A DNA stretch of 64,000 bases from positions 12,710,001 to 12,774,000 of the forward strand of contig OZ281495.1 of NCBI GenBank assembly GCA_965637545.1, read 5' to 3'. Shown here piece after piece: positions 18,001 through 61,900 of this stretch. The notes below the pieces were generated by a model. The model saw only the letters and a list, made by a program, of their open reading frames with translations. It was not told the DNA's origin and did not search any database. The stretch is from Phallusia mammillata. Its lineage: Eukaryota. Each line of letters starts with the position of its first letter. Position 1 is the stretch's first letter. The translations under genes were made by a program, and so were the position numbers.

Positions 18001-21000
18001 CATGTTTGTGTTTTACCTCCGCACGTTGTGTTTCTCTAAGGCCGCAGCACACCTTGAAGCCTTTTGGTGGGCGTTAAGCGTAACTGTACGAAGGGTGTCG
18101 CACGCACGAAATCGTGTGAAACGGGCGCCGGGAAAGCGTGTTATGGTAGCTTCACGCCTGATGTACGGCTCTGTGATGGAGTCGGAAGGATGAAAGTCGG
18201 CTAAATCAGCGGAAGAATCCATGCAGGGATTGACACTAGTGGTGTTAGTTTCGCATGGAAAATCGAAAATCGACGGGAGATTGGGTTGTAAGGACTTACA
18301 GGCTCTGTATGCTTGTGCATTAAACGTTTGTCTTTATTTTAGCGCAAAGTGACAAAATGGAAAACTGTGGTGTGTCTTTCATTATAAACAATAGAAAGGA
18401 TGGGAAGAAACTACAAGAAAGTCCTATAACGTACCTTGTGTTACGCAAGTTCTTAATCAGCAAATTCAAAATGTACAACGCCACAAGAACCTCACACACA
18501 TTATTAAGCTACTAGTGAAACAATATACAAAACCCTAAAAACTGAGATGCGACACTTCCCCTAACATAACGTACATTACGTCAGCATACAGCAAAACCGT
18601 GCAGCAGTCATAACCAAACATCCTTCATACACAGGAAGCCATGTACAGACATTACATCATACAAAGTAAACTTCGCAATCACACCGTGCAAATTTTTAGC
18701 CTAACCTGCAGACCTTGTTGCACACATAGGAAAGTGACATGGGCATTGTGCTTTGTTTCGTAAACTCAAATTCGTATGACTGACAACGTACCAGGGGGAA
18801 ACAAGTACTTGAACTTAGTGGTCGATGGTTGTTGTTTGAGCGTTGGCGACCTTCAAGAGGTGGATGGATTACGTAATGGAGTTTGCCTGGATCGTGGTTA
18901 ACACTCGAGGCTAGGGATTAATATCACCCGAAGAGTGATGGGTATTAGGACGAGTTTGTGATTGGTAGCTGAAGTATCTTAACCACAAAGGCTTTGTGTA
19001 GATTTAAGAGGCTTTGGTGTGATTTATGATTTTTCAAGTAATAAAATGCATTTGGACTTGATAGCTGCAAACCAGTTTTGCTTATAATGGTATTACACCC
19101 ATACAAAATACATCTGCCGTCGTAAGACATTTCAGGGACGTTTTTAAGGACGCTGCAGCATGGAAAATGCGTTTTTTTGTGAACATCAATAATTTCGAAA
19201 ATTGACAAAACACTAGTATTGAGCAAAAAAGGATTGATTACTAGCATGCGCAGAAGACCCAAACGGGAAGCTACACTCCATTGCACATGCCATGTGGGGT
19301 CACCGTAATCGTTTACAAGCCAGTGAACTGGTCAAGACGTTATTTGTATCCCAATTGCCTGCGTATGGCCGTAAGTGCATGAAACGCGTTCGGGGCGTAT
19401 ATAAATTCGTGTTAATTGTGTTACGCTTGACTTTAGACATTTTCACGTGGGTTATGATGCACACTCCAAAGTCACCTTCGGTGTTCCGTCAATCGCAAGA
19501 AAGCGCTGAGGCCCGTTGAGTACGGTTTCTAGTGATTCCGTGAATACAAGGCTAATTGCCACATCCAGTTCCCAAAAAACTTCGATAATTGCTACGACCG
19601 CACGAGCCTGGCAAAAACACTTATATGGTTTGAAAGACTGACCAGACTTAAAGATTTTGGTATGCACCTACGCACAGGCAAAAAATGAACTAAATGCGAA
19701 ATGGTTTTATCATTTTATATTACGACTGTTACAGATAACATACATGGTTCAAATGCCAAACAGGCGTTACCAGACTGCGTGGGTGAAGCTCCCAATCAGC
19801 AAACAAGCACTCCTGGCATATTGCAAAGGCCAAGCGTGCTGGAAAAGAGGTCTTGCTCAAATAACACAGCACACAGTCGCAAATGCGAAAGCCGGTCGAC
19901 CGCGTCTAGTCAGGAAACGAGTTTCGTAGTCGAGGCAATATTTGGGCGCAGCCGATTCAGCACAAATTGCCCGCAAATCATCGCCGAAGCTATAAGTCGC
20001 AGAATACGCCCATTGAAATTCAGCCCAAGGCGGAATAACGTCGCTAGCGTAAATCGATGGTACATGTAACAACACACAAGGCGCGTGCTACGTGGAATGC
20101 CACCTCGCTGTCGAATGACATTTGTTTGTAAACCTCCAAGCGCGATGGCGCCACCTTACAGAAATTTAATTGCACTTACTGATTTTCTTCTTATTCGGTC
20201 TGGGTAGGGTCATAGCATTGCGCCCGTCCCACGTATCGAAAACATCTTCGGCTTCGCGGCTTAAATCGCAATCATCGACGCTTCTAGTGGTTGCCTCCTC
20301 TTCCGAAGACGCACATAAAAGCTCAGATTCAGCGGCAAAAAGATCGCGAGCACGCCGCCGCTGGCGCGGGGATAGGGTGGCATTGATTCGGCGAAAGACG
20401 TTTGGCGAGGACCGATCTTTCGTCAATGGAGTTTTGGGCGGTCGAACTGGACTTGGAGGCATCATAGACGTTGATTTACGCGACGCGTTGCTAGGGTTAC
20501 GAGAGAGGTTTTGGATTCTTTCCTCACTTAACTCGCTACCCGTGCTTAACTCATCATAATCACCCGAGTCCCCATTACCCGAAGTGACAGAGTTACGGTT
20601 ACTCGAACCGCTGTCACAACGGATCTCAATGTACTCGTTATCGTTCGGAAAAATTCCAACCAGAGATGCCGGTGTTTCGCAGCTGTTCGACTCTATAATA
20701 TCATCTGGCTGTTGAAAAGTTGAAGTACTCAAAGCTGCTCTCCGACCCTTCTTGGATCGACCAAGTGTGCTGATATAGCCGAACTTTCGTGGAGTTTTGG
20801 GGGAAGATTCCTTTGACGATCCGCGCAAAGGGGGTGGTGGGTTACGACGCCAACTCCATGTATGGTAACCGCTTTTGGTCTTTGGCAACTTGTACTCTGG
20901 CAAATCATATTCAGTGCTCAGGTCGAAGTCGCTTTTTGATGAGTTGCTTCTCGGCTTTTTGCCTTTCAGGTAATCCACAAGTCCAGTGTTGGAGCGTGCG

Positions 21001-24000
21001 CGCTGATCTTCGCACTCATAATCTTCCGACTTTCGTTGCTGGAAGACTTGAAGAAGTCCGGTGAGTCCCGTCTTTTTCCTAACACTAAGATTGATGTCGG
21101 AAAGACCGTTTAGATTTGAACTTGACCGATTTCGGCTAGTGTGAGTCATAATACTCTTTACTCCACCAGTTCTTGCCGCTGATTTTACCTTTCTGGATGC
21201 TTCGCATGGGCACAGTGATAACAAATGTTAGCAGTATCAGTATTTAGATGGTTACGATACTTACAAATCTATACGAAGAGTCTGATGAGAACAATAAATG
21301 TCGTAATAAATATCTGTCAAACATTCTTCAAATGCCCTGAACAACATACTGTCCTACTGTTTTGCAAACTAATCTAAAACTTCAAAAACACAAACAGGTT
21401 TGTTCTGCAATAAAGTTCTTCGTAGCCATACCAAATATTAATATCTTAGCCAAATTCAGCCAAAGGGCCTAACCATTTGCTACGCCCAAACAAACATATG
21501 ACTCATATTACGAAATAATCTTGCATCACACACGATTACAAAGATTAATGTTAAAAAAGTGATGCTAGCAGAAAACGTAGCAACCAAATGTTCCGATAAT
21601 TAACATACTGTCTTGCGTAGGCAAATTAACAAATAGGGTCAAAACGATGTTACAAACACCAAAAACGAGCACGTTGCTATTGCGTCACAATGCTCGTAGT
21701 ACGTCAGGAGAAAGCAACCACATTGCAATGGATAAGCCTGTAACCGGACGTAATGCACAAAATCAAGTCGTTGCCATCAAAACAGGGTCAAAGACTGGTA
21801 CTTAGAGAACAATTTCTTGCCATTCAATACCTCCAAGACCGTATTGGCAACCGTTCTGCACCAACAAATTGGCAACTGTTTTGCACCAACAAATATTTGT
21901 AACTTACATACTAGCTTACAAACCTCAAGTTTTTTTAACCTCACTTACATTTGCAGATTTTCAAAAACAGAAAAATATAACCTCCACACACTTTTAAATT
22001 TTAAAAATGTTTAAGATGTCAACAGTTACTATCCAACCAGAAGTACTCGATCGGCACGAACGACAACATGTGCGCCCCAAGCCTTCCAGTCGCAATGCCT
22101 AGCTGTTAAGGCCATAATTCCAATTCCGCAGACGAATAAATCACAAGGCTTAAAGTCGTCAACCTGACAATTACGCCGCGTTTATCATACATATATAACC
22201 CTTCCTGTCGCACTTGCGCCAACCCAGCGTTTTACCTGCCTTACGTTTACGCACACTTAAACAACCAATGGCAACAGCAAGCCGGTTGCTGTGTCTCAGT
22301 CGGACAGAGGACTGTATATGCAGAACTGCGGCAAAACGACAACTTTCCGCACGCCCGGGGCGGCTTAGAGAAGACCAAGTGAAGCCGAGCGGTCGACGAG
22401 CGACGTTGATTAGAGAGAGTCGGAACCTGTTTGACCATAAACAAACATACCTTTCAAGTGCGCTTTGTCTCACGTAGGGCTGCACGACGGACCCCCCGCA
22501 CGTGTGGCATATGCCACGTGACTGCACAAATACCTCAGACAGATTAAAGCAAGTTTTCGAACGAGCTTCGTGCAGAAGAGCATAGCGTTTTTCGAACTTT
22601 GCTTCTTATTGTAAACAAAATACGCACACTTAAAAGTTAGTCCAAATTCAGCTTTGAACACTGATTTCCATTGCTAAATTTTAAGACTGAATTCATCCAG
22701 TAAAATGCACGCACTCTAATACATGCCCGAATCGACAGGCGAAAAAGTCCCGTTGACTGCAAATCGACAGCGTAAGTCACAAGTCCAATTTTTAGGTCTC
22801 GAACGTTTTGGTGACGGCCAATCAATGCGATTTGTAATGGCTGCTGAACCGGAAACCCGATTAGCAAAGCAACAAATCGAATAAAGTGACAGGTGCTAAC
22901 ATGCTAGAAATTAAAACAAAAAAATCGGCTAGCTTGTGAAATAAAAACGCCTTGTTTGTTTGCATGGAGCTAGAAAAGTATAGATTTGTGACGCCACCAA
23001 AGCAAAAAAATTACACTTACATCTCAAGCATACTTTACATTTTATTTGCAATAATTTCAGGAACAAATATATCCCTGGTTTAGTTATTGGGAGCAATTAT
23101 TCAAAATACCTCCGAATGAACTGAGCTACGTGGCCGCAACACAAACACCATGCGTTTTACGTGATCCTCAAAACAAATCGGTTTACACAGAAAACAGTTT
23201 TGTATGCGTAGAACTGACGCCAGCTCTTGCGCAAAATAACGAGTCCTGACCTCTGGTTGAAGTCTGTACGACACGATAAGACTTGTGTTCTACATCAACT
23301 TAAAGTGAGCTTCCCACGAGTCTATAGCTCGATAACTAATACACCAGGGAAGGGGCAGAACGACAAAAAACAAACACAACCCAAAAGTTTTGTTGACTGC
23401 CCTAAAGCTGTTTCGTGTTGCGTACATTGCAGTGAATTGTCATTCCTTTGGGAAGGTTGACCTTTTCCAGGACAAACGTACCTACGTAAAGCACATATCT
23501 ATCAAGCGCAACTTTAAAACGCCCTCATCAAGGCAAAAAAAAAACTTCAGAATCATTAGATCCGGTGTGAGGATTTCAAACTTAATTGGTTGACTGTCTG
23601 CCCAAATCTCGGTCAAAATCTCGCTTCAAACTACAGCAAAAACTTAATTGGATATGAAACCATGGCTACACAACAGTGAATTGTGCCGTGTATACTAAAT
23701 TTATACAAAAGCACTGTGGCGGCACTTTTCACTAATTGACACACAAAAGAATCAGTTCTAATTCCAATTCATCCATTAAGCGTGGCTTTCCAATCAAACT
23801 AATCATTCTGTTTACTACAATTTTACCACTATTAGCAGAACTTGTAGGATCGAGTACTATACCAACGTCTGATTTCAGGAACACCTGCCAAAGAGCGATT
23901 ACAAGGCGTCGTTGACTTAAACGGATTATTCAACGCGTCACTGGCTTGTACGGATTGAGGAGAAGAGACTTGGAGAATACTGTACTGGGAATGCTGACAA

Positions 24001-48000: not shown

Positions 48001-51000
48001 TACAAGAGGTTTTTTGGTTGGCAGTGCTGGCTTCATTTTGTTAACGTTTTTCAGAAATATCTAGGTTTATAGTTTTGCAATTTTTGATTTCTTTCAGTTT
48101 TGCAAGTTTATATAGATGTAGGACATACTTATTCACATACCAATTTAACTAAAGAAATCAGACAAAATGAAAAGTATAACCAAAACATGTGCCTGCTTTT
48201 TTGAACATTTTTAAGCTGAAATAACCTCACAAAACAAATGCCAAATAAAAGAGTAGTAACACTATGTACGTTGAACCAATTCGGACGGTGCTTTAAAAGG
48301 CATAGTCAAAAATAAAAGTGCTTTTATACACTTCTAACATTGCATGTGATTGATAGAGTCGTATTATTCATTATTCATCAAATTTTGGTAAAACATCTCA
48401 ATGGGTTGTGTACATGGGTTATACAACCAAATAACTTCATCGTTTACATGCGTTTGGATTGGCTCCACATTAAAAACTTGTTTAGCATGGTTAACTGTAC
48501 TAGTAATGTATAACGAACAGTAAGTTACCGAAATAGTTCGTAGCGACACAAAAGCTTCAAATTGTCGATGCTAATTTTATCTCCAATGACCATTTACAAC
48601 TTACACTATTTACCATGAAACCAATTTAGATTTTACTTTTAACTAACATAGTAAAGCCAGTCAGAGACAAAGAAATCAGTGTAAATGACCTGAAGTGAAA
48701 GGACAAAGGAACTTAGTGGGTGGATGGGGGGAAAGGGCAGCCACTGACATGACCACAAAGCGGAACACACTAAGTGGGACTTTTCTCATGACGCCCTTCT
48801 ACCACGATACAAGTGGGGCATGTGAATAATTGATATCGGGTTGCTAACTTAACTGCGACTCCAACAAAATGGATTTAGGAACACATCAGGCTTTACATAA
48901 AGTTTCACAGATTTTAACAAAAGCATAGCTAAAATTATACAGTTGTTCTCTGAAATAGTTTGATGCAACCATTGTATAATATATAATATGTTTTACGATT
49001 TCGTATCACACAACTTTGTACAGATTGCTAAGACAGTTTGCATAAATTGGTTCTTAGTTTGTCAACATTCCATTAATCTCTACATGCTTGTGAAATCACT
49101 TACTCCTTACCACATGTGCAACTTTTAACTGAATAAAATTTAGGCGGAAAAAATTGAAACATCAATATCCAATGTACATGTACACAAGACATGGTCTTTA
49201 AAAGTAGCCAAACTTGAAACAAAATTCAATGAAGAATAAAACATAGACATTTTAATACTCAGACATATATTTAACTACATACATTTAATAGTGTTTTGTA
49301 AAACGTCTGCGTAAAAAAATATCCACATTTCTATCTACATCATTGATAATTCAGTTTTTTAATGAATACGATAGCAGCAAAAAAATACACACCTGACAAA
49401 TAAGATAAGTCTTGTGCAAGATCTGGACATGATGTGGAGAGCCTTGCACTTTCACCACCTCCAGTCTGATAAAAGATTTTTAGTTTATTAAGTTATTTTT
49501 GAAAGCATATTCTTTCTAACCAAACCAACAAAGGTTTTTCGACAAAAAAGTGCATGTTAGATTGTAGACATACAGAATCTTTATTAACTAGAATAAATTT
49601 TCACCTCTCGTATTCTTTCCAGGTCTTTGTGTCGAAGAAAATGGATTCCATCACTTATTTCTTTCAAGTGACTTATGTTGTCAGCTGTTATCAAAGGTTG
49701 AAAATTAACACACTTTGAATTTGATTTAAAATTCTCCAAACATATCTAAATCAGCTCATTAAAATCTATTTTTAATTTATTCAAAGTTAAACCAGTGGTT
49801 TCTACGAACTACATAGTAATCCCAACTTCAACACACAGTGATGCTGCTTTTTACAAGCAAAAATTTTAAGTTTTCTGTGGCTATTATTCCCAACACAATA
49901 CAAGCATCATCCTACAAAAAAACTTACTTAAAAACTCTCCTTTGTCCCTGTCTGCAGAATTAGATGAATTCTTGTTTCTATTCGGATACTCCCTTAACTG
50001 TGCATCATTTCTATAATCCACTGTGTTATAGTCAGGTGAGTATGCTGCACCAGGTAAATTGTACACCTCATCCCCTGTATAATCCTCATTGTAATATTGT
50101 CCACCAGAACCGGGCACAGACGACAGGATACTATCGTCCATGGCCTCGTCCCAAACAGCACTTGTGTCAGGTAGTTGGAAGGCCGAGGGTGGTGCGGTTT
50201 TAACCAAGGCCTCAAATTCAATATCTGTGATAAATAATGTATGAGCTATTGATGGGACACGAAATGAAGTTTTTCACCACTTGTAATTTAATTTCCGACT
50301 GGGCAGCATGTCAAAACCCAAGCTCTTGTACCACAAAGTATTGGATAATACAATTAGGTGTTACATAACCACGTTTCTTTTTTCACCCTTACACTGTTTA
50401 ACTATAAACCATTCCAAAAACAAACTAGAAGGGTGGCTTAGCACATATTGCCCTTGCACATACACTATACCCTATTTTAAAAGATTAATACACTTCCTTT
50501 ACATATTTTATACTGGGTCCCATATCATCCACTGTCTTTTATAACCTTGGTTGTTTCTGCAAGCAAAAACTCATGGGTCCCCACACATGCAAAGTTGTAG
50601 ATAATGCATTTCAATAGATAACAATGAGTAAGTTTGGTATTGTGAAGACAAACACAGTGATTGGTACTGTGCATATTTAAATATGCTATATGGGGTACAA
50701 ACTATTTAAATTAAAAAACTCTCTTTAGGGGGCTAGCAGGATAACTAATGGAGGTTCAACACACACAAACTTAAAAGAAGAAAATCACAATGACTCAATC
50801 AATAGTCCTGCAAAATTTCAGTCCAATCTGCCAACGTTTAAAATTTTAACCACTAGAGGTGTTTTGAGCAACAACCATTAATGTTTTTGACGTCAAAGGG
50901 CTGTTAACAACCCCCGAACTGCAATGGCGCAATAACGTCCACCAAGCAACCCACAAAGTCGCAAACGAGGAACATACAACTGGTTGCCCTTGTAAGACTA

Positions 51001-54000
51001 TTGTGTCACAGAAATATTTTGTTTGTGTTGCCCAGTAACATACAAATACGTTTTACACTTTGGGGGCTTGTGGGGTAAATGTTAGGGTTACAGGGTTGAA
51101 CACAACAATCGACACCTATAAATACTGGGGTTATCAACAAAAACAAAGTGGGATGCACATCTACATAACTACATCTACCATCTGTATAAATTTCATCCAA
51201 ATCCATCAAGGATTTGATGGAAAAACGAGTCGGACAAACTTTGGGGAGAAGAAAAATGAAAGAAAAAAAAAGAAAAATAAACAAACAATTTGAGTAAAAT
51301 CAATATGTGTCCCATAAAAAAGGTTTCATTTTGTGTACTGAAGTAGCAGGTTCTAATTGTTTATTTTTAATTTCAATGTAAAAACAACACCAATCACTTT
51401 AGACCAGGGATCACCAAATTTTTGTTATGGCAAGCTAGATAAAAGAAAAAAAGACATGTTCCAAAACTGTGTCTGCAAAATGCTTTAGTGTGCTATTGTC
51501 AAATAGTTAAATTATGTGGAATAATGAAGAGTCCTGTCTACTGGCGATACTTATTTTTTCCATCACAATTAACATTGGACATTTATTCGCGCACAATATC
51601 AAAAGTATTGATACTTCTAGTCCAGTCTTAGATGTAACAAACTGCATTAGGATCATTTATATCAGTCCTGCAAAAATGAAGTAAATGTTTTACCAAGGGT
51701 TGGCCAAAGGTTGTTGTAAGTTTCTGAAGTTGTGGAAACTGTTCCAAAACTGTGCTGTTTCAAATAAGTTGTTTTTCCGATAGATTCTTTGTTTTCCCAC
51801 CGAATCACACCATGAACGTGCGGACTGAAGAAATATAAAAATATTTGTTTTGGGGATCTATGTGTTATAGTTTGTTTTGGACACAGTACATAGAAATGTT
51901 CATGTAATCTAATCAAATAGTGCTAATACACAGAAAACAGGTTTGTAAATTTTAATGAGCAGCGCTTACTAGAAAGATAGATTAAGCTATTTACTTTTCA
52001 AAGAAAGTTTCTTTAAAAAAATTAATAAATCAACTAGCATCATTCAATAACAAAAACGCCTGCTAACTTATGATATATATGACTAGCAACAGTTTAAATC
52101 TTACAAGGAATTTCAACAAGGGCAGTTCACCACAAAGTGGCACTTAAAGTGGTCAGATATTGTGAAGTTTCAAGTCACAGGCATTTCATTTAATCCCATT
52201 TGTTGTGGTGTTTAATTACAAATTGTCGGCGGACAGAGTGTGTGAAAAGAGTGTAATTATTTGTGCACTTTAATCAGTTTGTGTCGTAACTTAAGTAACG
52301 TGGTTAGCGAGCATAAACAGTCTGCAACCAACAAAAGGTGCCCACACTCTTGTGAGTGAAATTTTAGCCACTGAATTGCCACTTGAAAATACATGTTGTT
52401 CTACTACTGAGCCGGGGCACATTTTTTCTCTTTGATTAGAAACAGTTCACAGTTGCATTGTATTGTGCCAAAACCTTACCAACATGTTATTCAAAACACA
52501 ATTTTATGTGCAGTTACCTGACTGTTACTCACTTTTTTGATGTTACATAACAAAATCACGGATGTACATATGTATACTGTGTCATTTCTAAATACTATTT
52601 AAAGGCCCATATATTTCATTTTGTCTTAATTAAAACACCAAAACAATTGGATACCTAATGTGTTCTATCAATGCGCTTTTGTGTTGGCAGAGAGGGGTTG
52701 TGACAAGAATTTTATTTCCATGTTTTGTAACTAACTGAATAAATTTATTAGGCCAACCAGTATTGCTTACTATATCATTTTCACCTTACAGTCATTAAAC
52801 AAATCAAGTAAAGATTAGACCTTGTATGTTTTGTAAGAGGTTGTAAGGTTTCCACACAAGACGTTGTAAGAAAGCACCCTAGCGACAAATCTTGGCTTAG
52901 TATTACTTCCTATTGGCCAATTAATAAGCCACTGTGACACACAAGGGCCCCAGGCATGTCATGTCGCGACAATTATAATTTAGCTACATAGCAAAGGAAA
53001 ATTCTAAAGACCTGGGAAAAACCACATACAGTATAATATTGTCTATAGGTTTACACTTTAACAATTATTTTATTCTACTGTCTTGGATACAAAAAAATGC
53101 ATTTCAAGATGCAAAAGACATTGGTGACTTGATTCACAGCAGTGAATGTATTCTTTTGTTATTTTAAGCCCTGTTTTTTCTGCAATATAACGTATATATG
53201 ATATCATTTTATGGTCCATGGTATTCCTTTAAACAACTATTTCAAATACTGTATATATGAGAGACTTACTCAGTAATAAGGTCAGAAAGGCCGTCAAATT
53301 TCCGATCCCTGGCAATGTCCTCAGCAAAATCACCATGGCGATTCTTTAACTTGAGGCATTCTTTAGCACCGTTCTTGTCAAGAAGCAATGTAACAAATGT
53401 GGACAATCCGAGGCGAGCGGCAAAATGAAAAAGTGTCTCACGTGGAATACGTGCTGCAAAATGATACAAATTAGTTAAAGATGGGAAATTAAAACCTAAT
53501 CGGACATGGCTGTGTTTTTTATGTATAGTTTTGTGGTTCATTCCGAAACAAACAATATTATTGAGCATTTTAAAGTTTAAAAAGTTATAATCATATTAGG
53601 TGGCACATTTCATAGTTAAAACACATTTGCAGAAAGTTTCCAATTTTTGGTTTGAAAAAATTAACTAAAACAGTTTTAAATTGAAACAGTAACTTGAGAA
53701 GAATTTAAATATCAGGAGGGTTTAGTTGTGTACACAACAAGTCCTGACATGGCTTGTCTAATGATGTGTAACTCCATCAACCCTTCATATTTAAGACCAC
53801 CCACTCTGTACCTGTGTCTGGATCGCCAAGCACACTCCAGTTTGGAGGCAGAATAAGATGCTGGAATGCACTGGTAAGTCGCTCGTCTAAAGTAGAAAAA
53901 TCTTCTTGTGCTAATGAAAAATTTCCTCCCTGAATATAATCCCAATCTTCTAGGCTTTCCAAGTTGTGAACACTAATGAGACAAAAATGTAAATGAGGTG

Positions 54001-57000
54001 CATTAATTTCGATTTTTGTTTACTTTTTTGTTTTTTCATAATGTTAAAGGTTGAAAAAAATGTACTGTAAAAATCCAAGCCTTACTCAAATCCATTTTTT
54101 ATTATGTTTCTTCTTTCGATATTTTTTAATTTAATAGATTCATCTTACCTGTCAGCCAAGTATCTCGCAAGGTAGCAGGTTTGGTCCAGGTAGTATGTAA
54201 AGTCTTCAGCACCGATACATTTACACTCGCCGTTCGAAAATCTTACATAAACTGCTACTTCGACTCTTTCAGGTGGCTCATGATCTAAACATAAACATAC
54301 CACCTTAAAAACGGCAATTGTTCAAGTATATAAAGTTGATCACGACTAATTTATGTTGATCACAAAACATTGACATGTATATTATAAATTATAAGGGGAA
54401 ACAATAAATAAATTTGTTAACTGTCTGTTTGTCCCTCTATTCAATTTTTTTTCTGTCTTCACATTGTTGGTTAACTACAATTTAATTACACTCTTTTTTA
54501 CTATATTATCAGATACAATATTTGCAAAAAAATGTCTGCACATAACCTTTGGGGGGCTAAACAAACTGGACTCTGCAACCCGATATTCACTAGCACTGCA
54601 TCAATGGTCTGGAAAGCAATAAAACCCTTGGACTATTTCCTGAATCTCCACTAGATCAAAGATGGGCCAATTTGGCATACAAGTGATAGATGACCAGACT
54701 GGACACACAACTGAAGTCCTATTTACACAACAAATACAAGTGATCGAAAAAAGCTAACTTGTAAAGCAACAAGCTTGGTGTAGCACTTTCACTGCTTAAA
54801 GCCAATCCACAATGTTTGACAGAATGTACAAGGCGGATGTTACAACTTACAATCTACATTATGCACCTAAAAAGATTCACAGAATGCCTGATGCTTCTAA
54901 ACTCACCAGAAACCCAAAGAAAAATGTATTTATTAAACAGTGAAATTATCACTTATTTTCAGCATTCTGGTGAACGACACAACAGGTTTTTGAAAATGAA
55001 AGACTTTTTAACAAAGGGTTGTGGTTATATATATACACGTTGATTTTTGTCTGCTTTCAATAAGTAACCAGCTGTTACATCCCATGATACTAAAAGTACA
55101 TAAAAAGTTACTTAATTTGGCACGCTACAGACAATATCTCAAATATTGACATGAACTTCGATCTATTAACAATAGTTACCCAACTAATACTTTCAGCAAA
55201 CATTTTCTCTCCAAATTTGTACCTAGTACCTTTTGTATACTAGTAGCAGTAAGTCCAATCTCATTTAACACAGTTAAGTTTGCAGCTACCAAACCATTAC
55301 AAATCATTTGGAAAGGACTTATTTACAGGCTTTTGCTTACTTTCTAAATAATAATTTAACATTAAACTTTAAGCAAACACTGACCTACACTAATTTGTCA
55401 AAATACTTTGGCAATCAGTCACAGCCCCTCATGCCAAGGTTATTCATTAAAAAAACAAATTTAACATGTTCACCAGCTCCAAATATATAACACAGCTGCC
55501 TAAACCATGGCTAAATCCCAGTAACAGTGCAAACAAAAGTGCCATGAGCACCAACCAACAGGCGGGATTTGTCGTGTCCGCTGTGTAAATGTATTGTCTG
55601 ACAGTAGATCAACAACAATCAAATCGATTGTGTCCTTTGCGTGACTGTGTTATGACAGTACACATACAGAAACTGTTTCACAGCAGGGGGATCAATTGAA
55701 GTGACACTTCAAAGTTATCGTTGGAATGTCACTTGAAAGGGTTCAACATCAATCTCTATTTAATTTTTGTCATGTTTTTATATGTTTGTTCGAAAATGTA
55801 GTTTAATGGAAATTGCCCTAACATTTCAGTTTGTTCAAATAAACCTATTTAGAGAAGCACAATGTATAATCTAATTTGAGATGTGTAGAATACAAAATCA
55901 TACAACCAGTGACAAAGTTTTAAACTAACAGAACTTGAATTGACAATGTTCATTACAGTACATAAAAATTCCCAATTTTGTCATATGAGGTAGGTTAGTA
56001 CAATACCATATTTGAACAATATATGATATATATTTTTATCCCAATTTAACAATGCCTTTTTTTGCACCATTTAGTACCTCAAGTAAAAGTTACAAATATC
56101 CAGCTAGAAAAAATATACTACTATTGTGAGTGGTACATACATGTAAAATATTATGTGTCATACCTGGTACAACAGCCTGAAAGGCATTATCTTCAATGGA
56201 TATCCTGGCCTCTGTGACATGACGTTGTTTAGAGCCTTTAAAGACCAGGAAGGCTCGAATATGTTCAGGCAATGCGAAGTTTTCTGGAAGGAACATGACA
56301 ATCAAGCCACCACCCTGTACAAATACAACAGGTTTAGCAACAAACATTATACATGGCATATATAGGATTAAACTCTACAGTGCTACTGTATAAAAACAGC
56401 TAAAAAGACAATTTTTAAACAGCTGCAAAACTACATAAGTTGGAAACACTGAAAATATTTTTGATTAGCATACGTCATTTAAATGAATTTACACGTACAT
56501 AAACTGGTGCAGATGTTGGAAGAAGCTCCATCCGTGTCATGTCTGCAATATAAAATAAAACATGCAATTCAAATATAATACAGTTCACACAACAGATTTT
56601 GACCTGGGATGAATTAGATGTAGTGCTCTGTAATATCTCACCAGTGGGACTTAAACGTCATGGAATTTTTAATTGTTTAGTTAGGATCAGGCTGTAACAG
56701 TATTTAAGTCAAAATTGCACAATCATAGCATATCAAATGAGTGGTAAATTGACTTTCAAATACTAACAAACCCTGCCATGTATAAACTCCATAATGATTT
56801 CATGCAATACCTAATCGAACAAAATACTTTCACCATGACAAAGAAAACAATGAGTGTTGCCACACAGACAAGTGGTCTATTAAAAAACAACAGCGCATTC
56901 AAGTGAAGAAACCGTGACTCCTTCAACCACATACTACTACCAGCCATTGGGATTTTTGTGTTGCATAGTATTTTAGCTATTCAGTTTTGGTTAGTATTTT

Positions 57001-57202: not shown

Positions 57203-58538
57203 TCTGCGGTTCTTCAAAGTGATGGTGTGTTTCAGAATTTAAGAGCAATTATAGAATTATTACAAAACAACATTGTTCTGTTGATATAAATGAAGGTTCT
57301 GTGGCAATTAAACATGGAAACACTTCGGTTTAATGGATTTTGGCAAATGTAAGATTTTGCAAAAATTAATTTCGGTTAGCCAACATTCAAGTCTTGACCC
57401 AAAAAGTGCATGCTGCATCTACCTCCAAAGTGTGGATAAAAACTTCAAAAGCATGTAAGTGTTGAATAAGTAAACAATACAAAAATTGCCTGAAGCAAAG
57501 AACATAAATAAACTTTTTTTGATTTTCTGCTAATAAAGTTGATATCTCTATTTTACATTGTTTTAATAATTGAAATGCAAATACTGATTTGTTAAGTTGA
57601 TGTGTGATTTGCAAATTTTTTTTGTTTATGAGATAACCTGTAGGTTCTACTGCAAATAACATTTTGCTAAAAATGCACAAGAAATCCGGTATAGCAGAAC
57701 AAGAGTTCCTCTTATTTCAAAATACTTCAAATGGTCTGAATCTGAATAATGAAACAATGCATGTTGAAAAGTGTTTAAAATAAAAAGCTTTGCTAAACAC
57801 GTGTTGTGCTGGTAGAAATGGTCTTAAATAGACAGAAAAACTACTGCAATTCAGTTTCCCAAAAATAGTTTTTCAGTAATCTGAACTAAAGAACGGCGAT
57901 TGAACAAATTAAGCCAAGCAACTCACGTTTAACAAAATATTGTTGGTATTTAAAGTTTTGAAACCAGGGGTGCTAAAGTTACAAAAACTAACACAACGTA
58001 TTTCACTGTAAAGTAGAAATATATCAACATCAAGTCATCAATCACCACCACAAAAACAAGACATTAAAATAGACGTCTTTCAACAGTGGTTGGTGCTGGT
58101 GGTTACGTCAACAGTTTTGGCTAAAAATGTTTGCAAATCAAATCAATGCACAGTTTTCTTAATCAGTTTCCGAGTATACACCATAATGCTTACAAAACAT
58201 ATCCGAAAGTACGGAAACCAAACTTCCACAAACAATTAGATGAAAACAACACACGGGAATTTTGCTCAGCAAAGATCCCTTCTGCTGTTACTAAATCCAA
58301 TGAGATAAATGTCCCTTTTTAGTTTTTAAACGTTTTAAATCTAAGCGTGAACTTTTTGGGCCCCACCCGGATGTTGTATTGTTTTAATTTAAAGCATTTC
58401 TTTATATTTTTGCTTACTCTAGACTACCTTGTTTTGTACAAGTTTTCTCTTCGGTACCTAGACTGTTGGTCTGTTCTTGAATGAACACTAGAAGTGATCG
58501 GAAAATAAAGCAGTACCGGTTTCAAAATGCTTTTGCAT

Positions 58539-58544
58539 TTTATT
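58539..58544 (-). terminator. Polyadenylation signal AATAAA of the VWF-like gene
   Basis: TTTATT on the + strand about 340 nt downstream of the stop. Confidence 0.5.
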
Positions 58545-58571
58545 GCAATGATAAAAACAAAAAGGAACAAA

Positions 58572-58626
58572 TCAGGTCAGGTCAGGTCAGGTCAGGTCAG
58601 GTCCAGGTCAGATCAGGTTCGGTCAG
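58572..58626. repeat. (TCAGG)n pentanucleotide microsatellite in the VWF-like 3' UTR
   Basis: Six perfect units followed by degenerate units. Confidence 0.9.
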
Positions 58627-58880
58627 ATTGCCGACAAATGATAAAACGATACGATAACGTAAAACACAAACAAAAAATCAAAAGAAAAAACGAGAAACAC
58701 AAGACCGCCGAAACAGTCTTGTGGGCAAAAATCGGGTTAGTCAGTTTCCAGTCCGTCACCGCAAGACGTAGTGAAAAGCACAAAATTTCGCAAAAAAAAG
58801 AAAAAATGGAAGAACTGTACAAATAGTCATTGGTCGCTAATAACAACGATCAACTCGATTAAATTGGCTTCCTCGTTGGC

Positions 58881-58970
58881 TTACGAAGCCCCGTTGGCAT
58901 TGAAAGCGGCATTTAGCGCTTGCTCAAGTGCTTGTTTGATGCCGGATTTCGTCGCACTTACTTTCACCAC
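58881..58970 (-). CDS. VWF-like terminal exon (VVKVSATK...ANGAS*)
   Basis: atttgcag| acceptor; TAA stop at 58883-58881; followed by an AATAAA. Confidence 0.75.
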   Translation of the reverse strand: MVKVSATKSGIKQALEQALNAAFNANGAS

Positions 58971-61900
58971 CTGCAAATATACCAAGTTTAAAACGTTTAA
59001 AAGTGCATGTTTTAATGATTCGTTAAAGTAGGGTATGCATATGATATGGTCGTTAAACATAGTTGTCCCAAAGGACCAAAAAAGGAGATACTGGGTTTCC
59101 CCGGAAAGCAGTGCAGGTTTCCAGCCCAACTATTTTAATAATTGTTCAATACACACGTAAAAGTAGGTTATATTGTAAATATAAACAACAAAATTGTAGG
59201 CTATCCCTAAACTAAAACATTGTATTTAAAACATGAGCAAAATTGCCGAGACGTAAAACGTCGGAGTAGCCTTTTGTATAGTCTTCCAGTTACGGTGACA
59301 GGAGTAACTACAGCCTACTTACATCCAGCTGCGGTGCATCAAGGTTGTACTTGGCCAAAAGACTTCGTACCGCCTCCGAAATGGCAACGGTGTCTTTTGA
59401 AACGTTGTCAACCTCCAGCACTTTAACTTGGTAGTTGAGGCCGTCTTTCCAGGACGCCACAATCCCTACGTTGCTCTACAAAGGCAAAAATGCAGTCCAA
59501 ACATAAAACAACCTAAATCTAGCAAGCATTTTTATGTAACAGATATTATATAGCCTACGTGTAGATATTTTAAGCTGTAAACATTCAATGTCCATTAAAT
59601 GAAGAGACATGTGTGTCTGAAGAGGTTTTGCTAATAGCAGTTTCATATCTTTAAAATCGTACCTTGTTTCCGGATGTAACAGGGTCTTTGACAGACATGG
59701 TTGGTACGACATTCCATCCATCGCATATTCCATGACCAGAACATACGCATTTCGTAATGTTCACAAACGTTAAAGACGTCTGAAACAAACAAAACAGTAA
59801 AACTTTATTGAAATAAAATTACTTATTTAAGACGCTTTAAAACATTTCTTAAATCATTAAATTCTTTTTACAAAACTGTTCAGTTAAAAATCATCAAGTA
59901 TACCTGACTACCGTCTTGACAAGTCGCTGTCACCGTTGCATTGTCGTATTTGTCCGCCTTACAACACGAGCAATGTTGTACGTAACTTCCAGTGGCTTCG
60001 TTAAAGTGCGAGGCACTACCGCAGTTTCCTTGGCAAGAGGTAAGAACGATTGATTGGTCAGTTTGGCAACCTCGAATCTGGTATTGGCGGGAAACCATCG
60101 GTACTGCTTCGCAGCTCTCCCGGGCGGCTACGCCTGTAATTTCACGTTCATTCTGGTTTATAAGGTAAAAGCCATTTTGACTTTGTCCGAATGTATTGAA
60201 AGTGTAAAATCGTTAAATTTTTATTTTGAAAATATACACTATGTCACTACGTCACTGCATCAACCCAAGCTCAATTCCGAATGCATTTTTCTGGTTTTAG
60301 TTGATTGTGAAATCTTTGACAAATCAAACTCGTGTTTAGCAAACCTTGTGTTTCTAGTCTTTGTAAACAACTTACATTCAGCGCAACAGCCGTCAGCGTC
60401 ATAGAATATGGTTCCCTGCAACAAAAACAAAGTTCAAGAAAACTTTGAAGGTCACTGAGTTAATTAAATAAATGTTAAACGTCACAAATTGGGGCACCAA
60501 TTGAAATAACCAATGGCTAGAAGTATTGATTGTGGAGTTTATATTTCATTGTAGTTTGTTGAACTTACCCCGGCTTCGATGCACGCTGTTATATTTACTG
60601 TCGGACAAAGTGTCTCTGACGTCAGTGTAACGGCATATCCGTCTTCACCTGCTACACATTGGTAAGCGTGACATCGTTGCCTATGGGCCTGCCCTATCTG
60701 AAAACAATGATAACAAATGGAAGTATTTTAAATGTTCATTTAGACTTGCTTAGTATAGCTTGAATTTTATTGTTACAAAATACAACACAAAGTAGCTATA
60801 TCTTCTTTTGACAATTATTATCTTTACGATCAAAACAGCCAAGATAAAAATGCATCCATACTGGGATCAGCCGTAAAGGGTCTATGCACACCACAAAAAT
60901 CTAGCCTGTGGTGGGATTCGAACCCTCCGCAGGAGTCTTTCCTGGACTCGCTCTCGAACAACTGAGTTACACAGCCTCAGCTGTAAACACCGAAAGTCGA
61001 CCAAAACAAGAATTTTGCCAAAACTGAATGAAATGTCCATTTAAGATATAAGCTATACTACCATTGAAAGTTTTTTTAGTTTCGACTGTAAACTTTCGGT
61101 TGATTTTTAATGACGTACCTGCAATACCATGGTAGCATTGTTTAAGCTGTCGACCACAATAGTGATGTTACATTCAGTTGGGCGGCAAACACCGCAACAT
61201 GTACCCGGTATCGCTTGTCTGTCATATCCCTGCAAAGCAAAACGGATCAAACATGTCATTGATAACAATTTAAAACAATCTTAAACAAAAATAAAACCAG
61301 TAAAAAGAATTTAGCTAATCTTCCTAAAGTTTATCAATGGACGACAGGTATTGTATTGAGTTTAACTCCTTTATGTATACGCCGTAAAGTACTTGTACAT
61401 ACTGTTTAAGCTTAAGCGCACCAACATGTCTTGCCTGAACGTTAACACCAGAGGTTCCCAACAATGCAAAACATGTTCATTCCTACCTAATAGACCATAG
61501 AGTAGATGCTAAACCATACAGAGATTATTCAAAAGTTGGGTATTACATCAACTTTTCACGCTATATTCCTAGACCTAAAGTGTTTTTTTACAAACCACAT
61601 GTATACAAATTAAAGTAAATTCTCTGCTCAAGTTTAAGTTTTAAAAGTCCTCCCCGTGTGGGAACGAGTGGTTTACACAGTAACAGAGTTGTAAGCCAAG
61701 CCGGGCTTGAGTCACGTGCGGGTTCGATCTAGCGGAAAAACAATAGGGGCTTGATTCCAGGTCGCACTCGGCATTATCATTGCCGCATTTTCTACAACTT
61801 TCGTGTTTAATTTGGTATTTTTTGGATTCGGCCTTGTACTTTTATGTCCCAATTTCAGACTCTCCACAACAAAGCATCATGTAGAAGTATGTTACCGGAG

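What the first reader, a model, noticed from the sequence alone, without database searches (positions are those of the whole stretch)
58881..59741. About 100-aa Cys-free domain appended after the cystine knot of a VWF-like protein
In VWF, gel-forming mucins and otogelin the CK is the extreme C-terminus and mediates tail-to-tail dimerisation. Here the frame continues past the last CK cysteine (SGHGIC) through two more well-formed exons: DGWNVVPTMSVKDPVTSGNK-SNVGIVASWKDGLNYQVKVLEVDNVSKDTVAISEAVRSLLAKYNLDAPQLD-VVKVSATKSGIKQALEQALNAAFNANGAS*. It shows an alternating strand/amphipathic-helix pattern that I do not recognise. It could be a lineage-specific module added to a polymerising mucus or adhesive protein.
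Basis: partly seen in the sequence, partly recalled or inferred. Interest (0 to 1): 0.7.

Follow-up and report, generated by a model that had tools for sequence, protein, structure and literature searches.

The report
Extra tail after VWF-like cystine knot
A giant sea-squirt relative of the clotting protein von Willebrand factor really does carry 100 extra cysteine-free residues after the end domain that normally finishes such proteins, and this tail is in the mature mRNA, resembles nothing I could find, and has an unknown role.

Summary
They run through the stop at 58881-58883 into a ~360-nt 3'UTR with AATAAA at 58544-58539. No contig covers the introns.

The domain before the tail is a complete cystine knot. 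Its 11 cysteines have the spacing of human VWF in 9 of 10 intervals. The last cysteine therefore corresponds to VWF Cys2811, which bonds to its twin in the partner chain.

The tail is exactly 100 residues with no Cys, 10 basic and 10 acidic residues, and one NVS sequon. It reads as a ~20-residue linker followed by strand-strand-helix-strand-helix.

Searched exon by exon, it hits no Pfam family and no solved structure. Among 1.84 billion representative proteins only two repeat-protein artefacts appeared.

My reading is a small folded orphan module, displayed in two adjacent copies at the dimer junction. Its fold, pairing and function are inferred, not shown.

The scan earlier noted a different gene of this genome with a non-terminal cystine knot (s1-408633), but not this tail.

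The parts
60569..60700 (-). Upstream cysteine-rich (VWC-like) exon, 44 codons, phase 0-0
   Evidence: Spliced contigs in 4 runs; frame and translation
60376..60415 (-). 40-nt micro-exon that ends a VWC-like module (..GCCAE)
   Evidence: Joints 60132/60375 and 60414/60568 with cut +1; GTAAGT..CAG introns
59904..60133 (-). Cystine-knot exon A, cysteines 1-8 of 11
   Evidence: Pfam DAN 28.3 bits and Cys_knot 24.6 bits, both above their cut-offs; PDB hits to gremlin, bursicon, VWF CK 4nt5 and MUC2; spliced contigs
59723..59779 (-). Cystine-knot end, cysteines 9-11 (C-x-C-x5-C); the last Cys codon is 59725-59723
   Evidence: Translation; Cys spacing equals that of VWF
59663..59722 (-). Tail part 1: 20-residue linker in the same exon as the knot's end
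   Evidence: Translation; joint 59663|59475
59323..59475 (-). Tail exon 3: 51 codons, phase 0-0, beta-hairpin plus helix, one NVS sequon
   Evidence: AlphaFold2 on this exon alone gives E3-9, E15-21, H27-42 at pLDDT 60
58881..58970 (-). Tail exon 4 coding part: 29 codons (short strand plus amphipathic helix) and stop TAA at 58883-58881
   Evidence: weak resemblance to designed helical repeats only
58520..58880 (-). 3'UTR of about 361 nt, holding a TCAGG microsatellite at 58572-58626
   Evidence: Contigs reach 58520-58590; TRF
58539..58544 (-). Polyadenylation signal AATAAA, about 19 nt before the contig end

Best explanation
These are the last exons of a giant, transcribed von Willebrand factor-like gene of a sea squirt (Phallusia mammillata according to earlier notes of the scan). 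They encode a complete 11-cysteine cystine knot. In the same frame and the same mature mRNA, 100 cysteine-free residues follow: a linker of about 20 residues and about 80 residues predicted as strand-strand-helix-strand-helix. By spacing, the cysteine just before the tail corresponds to VWF Cys2811, which forms a disulfide with the same cysteine of the partner chain. A tail-to-tail dimer would therefore carry two copies of the tail starting a few angstroms apart at the centre of the junction. I think they most likely fold into a small module that pairs with its twin and caps the junction, shielding the inter-chain disulfides or offering a two-fold binding site. Shown here: the exons, the splicing, the open frame, the 3' end and the knot framework. 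Inferred: dimerisation of the knot, and the folding, pairing and role of the tail.
For: Spliced contigs from 4 studies give the same joints, and one contig is 10,385 nt long. The knot exon passes the Pfam Cys_knot and DAN cut-offs and hits VWF CK 4nt5 and the MUC2 C-terminus in the PDB. The Cys intervals are 15,11,4,17,2,1,14,16,2,6, against 15,11,4,17,2,1,14,16,2,5 in human VWF (VWF numbers from PMC8626975 and PMC6333368). Cys2811-Cys2811' is a self-to-self inter-chain bond thought to shield the other two (PMC6333368). The tail composition looks globular: V 15, A 12, S 10, N 9, K 9, only 3 Pro, and net charge 0. AlphaFold2 on exon 3 alone gives a hairpin plus a 16-residue helix. Exon 4 has a helical hydrophobic moment up to 0.57. 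The stop lies in the last exon, so nonsense-mediated decay is not expected. Exon G+C is coding-like.
Against: The exon 3 model has only pLDDT 60, and the whole tail was never folded. No relative was found that would show conservation. No protein-level data exist. The runs are only guessed to be RNA, although spliced contigs with GT..AG introns can hardly come from DNA. Pairing at the dyad rests on analogy with human VWF.
Confidence: 0.6

Rival explanations
1. The tail is a known fold or family that went unrecognised because each exon had to be searched alone (20, 51 and 29 residues).
For: Piecewise queries are weak, and HMMER filters drop faint hits. The strand/helix pattern is common to many small alpha/beta domains.
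Against: Exon 3 covers about half of the putative domain, yet it gives no Pfam hit at E<=10. Its only PDB hit is one chance-level match. It has no true hit among 1.84 billion representatives.
Confidence: 0.15
2. The tail is a young, neutral read-on: an ancestral stop after the knot was lost and downstream spliced UTR exons became translated, with no folded structure or function, much like the origin of the hCG-beta C-terminal peptide (from general knowledge).
For: There are no detectable relatives, and fold confidence is low.
Against: The frame stays open for 100 codons across two introns (p about 0.001). G+C is coding-like, unlike the UTR. Hydrophobic periodicity is regular and the composition is balanced and not low-complexity.
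Confidence: 0.15
3. The tail is a C-terminal propeptide that helps the knot dimerise in the ER and is then cut off, so the mature polymer ends at the knot as in vertebrates.
For: The ~20-residue linker between knot and tail could hold a cleavage site. This cannot be tested here.
Against: The 100 residues hold no dibasic or R-x-x-R site, with only one Arg.
Confidence: 0.07
4. The joints are an assembly artefact: the tail exons belong to another transcript and were joined to the knot by the contig assembler.
For: The evidence is contigs, not raw reads.
Against: Identical joints occur in 4 runs of 4 studies, each at canonical GT..AG sites, with the frame kept. The contigs end at a poly(A) signal. 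No other copy of the tail exons lies in the window.
Confidence: 0.03

Closest known systems
Human von Willebrand factor CK domain (PDB 4nt5)
   Same: Both have 11 cysteines, with identical spacing in 9 of 10 intervals. The domain follows VWC-like modules in a giant VWF-type protein.
   Different: Human VWF ends 2 residues after the last cysteine (Cys2811 of 2813). Here 100 more residues follow.
Gel-forming mucin C-termini (MUC2, PDB 7qcu; Ciona Ci-GFM1, PMC6109156)
   Same: They share the VWC-CK end of a polymerising secreted protein, and the knot matches MUC2 residues 700-768 of the solved fragment.
   Different: In these proteins the CK is described as the C-terminal domain (PMC6109156, PMC10082768). 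No alpha/beta tail is described.
Sea-squirt gel-forming mucin with an internal cystine knot (scan note s1-408633, same genome, other gene)
   Same: It is a second case in this animal where the knot is not the end of the protein.
   Different: There about 1,070 residues follow (PTS repeats, CysD and a helical tail). Here a single compact 100-residue segment follows. I could not compare the sequences.
Peripheral subunit-binding domain of E. coli E2o (PDB 2btg, 1bal)
   Same: A 17-residue stretch of the exon 3 helix is 11/17 identical to it.
   Different: E is about 0.4, all five PDB rows are variants of one protein, Pfam E3_binding gives no hit, and the G-T-G..G-R-I half of that domain is absent. 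I take it as chance.

Membership tests
C-terminal cystine knot (CTCK; Pfam PF00007 Cys_knot / DAN clan), for the domain before the tail | Profile match above the curated cut-off | tested here: met
   Cys_knot 24.6 bits (cut-off 24) and DAN 28.3 bits (cut-off 22) on exon A alone
C-terminal cystine knot (CTCK) | 11-cysteine framework of the VWF/mucin type, including the three inter-chain cysteines | tested here: met
   Intervals 15,11,4,17,2,1,14,16,2,6 against VWF 15,11,4,17,2,1,14,16,2,5 (PMC8626975, PMC6333368)
C-terminal cystine knot (CTCK) | Lies at the extreme C-terminus of the protein | tested here: not met
   100 residues follow in the mature mRNA
C-terminal cystine knot (CTCK) | Forms disulfide-linked tail-to-tail dimers | not testable with these tools
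   Inferred from the conserved cysteines only
VWF / gel-forming mucin superfamily (whole protein) | D assemblies, a central VWA or PTS region, then VWC modules before the CK | tested here: inconclusive
   The D and VWA parts lie beyond the window (scan notes s1-355925, s1-355966). In the window there are only cysteine-rich exons with one weak VWC hit (E 0.061). A 10,385-nt contig shows a very long mRNA.
Mucin PTS region (for the tail) | Pro/Thr/Ser-rich, repetitive composition | tested here: not met
   P+T+S is 17 of 100 residues, with no repeats
SEA domain or other Pfam alpha/beta modules of mucins (for the tail) | Profile match | tested here: not met
   No Pfam family at E<=10 for any of the three tail pieces. 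The test was piecewise, so it is weak.
Peripheral subunit-binding domain (Pfam E3_binding) | Profile match and the second-half G-T-G..G-R-I..D-V motif | tested here: not met
   No Pfam hit; PDB E about 0.4 over 23 residues only; exon 4 lacks the motif
GPI-anchor signal (for the tail) | Hydrophobic stretch of 15-20 residues at the very C-terminus | tested here: not met
   The last 20 residues form a polar amphipathic helix ending ..NANGAS

The most novel reading that the evidence does not exclude
The tail is an undescribed small alpha/beta domain that pairs across the two-fold axis of the cystine-knot dimer. This would give VWF/mucin-type polymers a capped junction that protects the inter-chain disulfides or serves as a bivalent docking node, a design not known from vertebrate VWF or mucins.
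Probability: 0.25. Interest if true: 0.6.

Novelty: new variant of a known kind. Interest (0 to 1): 0.42.

Why it matters
In VWF, gel-forming mucins and their relatives the cystine knot is treated as the end of the chain, and the last cysteine seals the tail-to-tail dimer. This protein keeps that knot almost residue for residue in its cysteine framework, yet continues for 100 residues from the sealing cysteine. It is a natural test of what can be attached at the dimer junction. If the tail folds and pairs, it would show a second, non-covalent layer of junction assembly, and would mark a handle for engineering such polymers. With the other non-terminal knot noted in this genome, it also suggests that sea squirts have remodelled the C-terminal ends of these polymers more freely than vertebrates.

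Tried and rejected
1. Exon 3 against 1.84 billion representative proteins gave only P0001 and P0002. P0001 is an LRR repeat protein and P0002 a bacterial DUF7507 repeat protein. Their scores are sums of many weak stretches, and BLASTP of exon 3 against the best stretch finds nothing at E<=100. I rejected both as artefacts.

2. The word search with the 110-aa knot frame and the 82-aa exon 4 frame was meant to fish out a stored fragment holding the joined tail. Neither gave a candidate.

3. A metagenome scan with exon 3 gave 600 pattern matches, none confirmed.

4. The PDB searches gave one chance-level resemblance for exon 3 (E. coli E2o binding domain), designed helical repeats for exon 4, and nothing useful for exon 2.

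5. tblastn of the tail pieces against the window found no second copy. In that script the exon 2 piece was cut in the wrong frame, so only the exon 3 and exon 4 results count.

6. I considered and rejected a GPI signal, a PTS region and furin sites from the sequence.

7. I did not run a fold search on the exon 3 model. At pLDDT 60 and 51 residues the matches would be meaningless.

8. Papers on ascidian mucins, the endostyle and larval glue do not mention this tail.

9. The scan's own notes, looked up by sequence, were blank.

Full report
**What is in the sequence**

On the minus strand the frame of the cystine-knot exon continues through three further pieces. The first is 59663-59779 (39 codons: the last 19 residues of the knot, then 20 more). 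The second is 59323-59475 (51 codons). The third is 58884-58970 (29 codons), followed by TAA at 58883-58881. After the last knot cysteine (codon 59725-59723) there are exactly 100 residues and no cysteine. All introns begin GT and end AG, and all three junctions are phase 0.

**Is it expressed as proposed?**

The look-up of sequencing runs listed 20 runs of one organism from 6 studies that hold part of the stretch. Most hold about 0.43 of the sampled words, which is about what the exons plus UTR make up.

I laid four runs from four studies on 58400-60800. Each has one contig that joins 60700..60569 | 60415..60376 | 60133..59904 | 59779..59663 | 59475..59323 | 58970.. and runs on to 58520-58724. 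Every skipped part is CT..AC on the plus strand, which is GT..AG on the minus strand.

- No contig lies in the introns, so the read-through stop at 59653-59651 is not used in what was assembled.
- One contig is 10,385 nt long, so the mRNA is very long.
- AATAAA lies at 58544-58539, and the furthest contig ends at 58520.

Caveats: these are contigs, which drop rare isoforms, and the runs are only guessed to be RNA. Contigs that lack canonical introns are nevertheless hard to explain as DNA.

**Is it more than chance?**

With the window's base composition, 100 codons stay open with a probability of about 0.0012. The tail exons have G+C of 0.43, 0.51 and 0.50, like the knot exon (0.52). The introns have 0.21-0.36 and the 3'UTR 0.39. 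The stop lies in the last exon.

**The domain before the tail**

Exon A passes the Pfam cut-offs for Cys_knot and DAN. In the PDB it matches gremlin, bursicon, the VWF CK (4nt5) and the MUC2 C-terminus.

I counted cysteine positions per exon and added the offsets, without building a joined sequence. The intervals are 15,11,4,17,2,1,14,16,2,6. Human VWF gives 15,11,4,17,2,1,14,16,2,5, from the disulfide numbers in PMC8626975 and PMC6333368. The framework therefore maps one to one, and the last cysteine corresponds to Cys2811.

In VWF that residue forms Cys2811-Cys2811' with the partner chain, and it is thought to shield the two other inter-chain bonds from reduction (PMC6333368). Human VWF has 2813 residues (PMC6109156), so it ends two residues later. 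Here 100 residues follow.

**The gene**

Earlier notes of this scan describe the neighbouring, overlapping window as a VWF-like gene of more than 6,900 residues with about twenty VWA domains (s1-355925). They also note a CysD domain in the VWA array 10.5 kb beyond my window (s1-355966), and they name the animal as Phallusia mammillata. I did not test these notes, apart from seeing the long contig and the cysteine-rich exons upstream.

**The tail itself**

- Composition: V 15, A 12, S 10, N 9, K 9, L 8, D 7. It has 10 basic and 10 acidic residues, 3 Pro, one sequon (NVS in exon 3), no dibasic site and no hydrophobic C-terminus.
- AlphaFold2 on exon 3 alone gives strands 3-9 and 15-21 and a helix 27-42, at a mean pLDDT of 60.
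- Exon 4 starts with a short V-rich strand-like stretch. It then has an amphipathic helix with hydrophobic moment up to 0.57, and it resembles only designed helical repeats.

**Relatives**

- Pfam gives nothing for any tail piece at E<=10.
- The PDB gives only a 23-residue match of the exon 3 helix to the E. coli E2o subunit-binding domain, at E about 0.4. All five rows are variants of one protein, and the family profile does not hit. I take this as chance.
- phmmer of exon 3 against 1.84 billion representatives gave two hits. Both are repeat proteins whose scores are sums of weak stretches.
- There was no self hit, so this animal's proteins are not in that library.
- Word searches for stored fragments found nothing, and so did a metagenome scan.
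- There is no second copy in the window.
- This absence is weak evidence. A 51-residue query needs roughly half its residues identical to pass, and ascidians diverge fast.

No stored protein holding the joined tail could be found to stand in for it. The fold of the whole tail, and HHpred or Foldseek on it, therefore remain undone.

**How it most likely works**

- Shown: a VWF-type knot with all inter-chain cysteines, followed in the same polypeptide by 100 residues.
- Inferred from VWF: the knot dimerises tail to tail and the last cysteine bonds to its twin. The two tails then start side by side on the two-fold axis, at very high local concentration.
- My preferred reading (about 0.6 for a real, folded, retained module, and less for the specific role) is a small alpha/beta module that pairs with its twin. 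It would cap the junction, adding to the shielding that Cys2811-Cys2811' is thought to give, or it would present a two-fold binding site.
- Rivals are an unrecognised known fold (0.15), a neutral read-on after stop loss (0.15), a removed propeptide (0.07) and an assembly artefact (0.03).

**Novelty and score**

The knot and the protein belong to a known kind, and a compact, non-mucin tail after the sealing cysteine is a new variant of it. The scan has another case of a non-terminal knot in this genome (s1-408633), with a very different continuation. I score interest at 0.42. The feature is real and unusual for the family, but it is an orphan sequence in one species, with no fold, no relatives and no tissue yet.

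Noticed in passing
window 58572-58626: A TCAGG microsatellite (about 11 copies) lies in the 3'UTR of the gene. One run's contig lacks one 5-nt unit, so it varies in length between individuals.
   Followed up: partly
window 60376-60415: A 40-nt micro-exon, supported by contigs in all four runs, encodes the ..DGCCAE end of a VWC-like module.
   Followed up: partly
window 60611: A T>G difference in one run falls on the third position of a Thr codon (ACA to ACC) and is synonymous. It is the only base difference seen over the exons laid.
   Followed up: yes
window 59323-59779: Exon 2 (39 codons) and exon 3 (51 codons) are both phase 0-0, so skipping either would keep the frame. No such isoform appears in the contigs.
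   Followed up: partly
window 49887-56374, minus strand: A run of open frames of 58-129 aa lies downstream of the VWF-like gene on the same strand and looks like exons of a separate gene. None hits Pfam at E<=0.01.
   Followed up: partly
window 20169-21227, minus strand: This 353-aa open frame, the longest in the window, is Ser/Lys-rich and has no Pfam hit. I did not examine it further.
   Followed up: partly
window 59342-59410 (exon 3 helix): A 17-residue stretch is 11/17 identical to helix 1 of the E. coli E2o peripheral subunit-binding domain. I judge it chance (E about 0.4, no Pfam support), but it is striking to the eye.
   Followed up: yes
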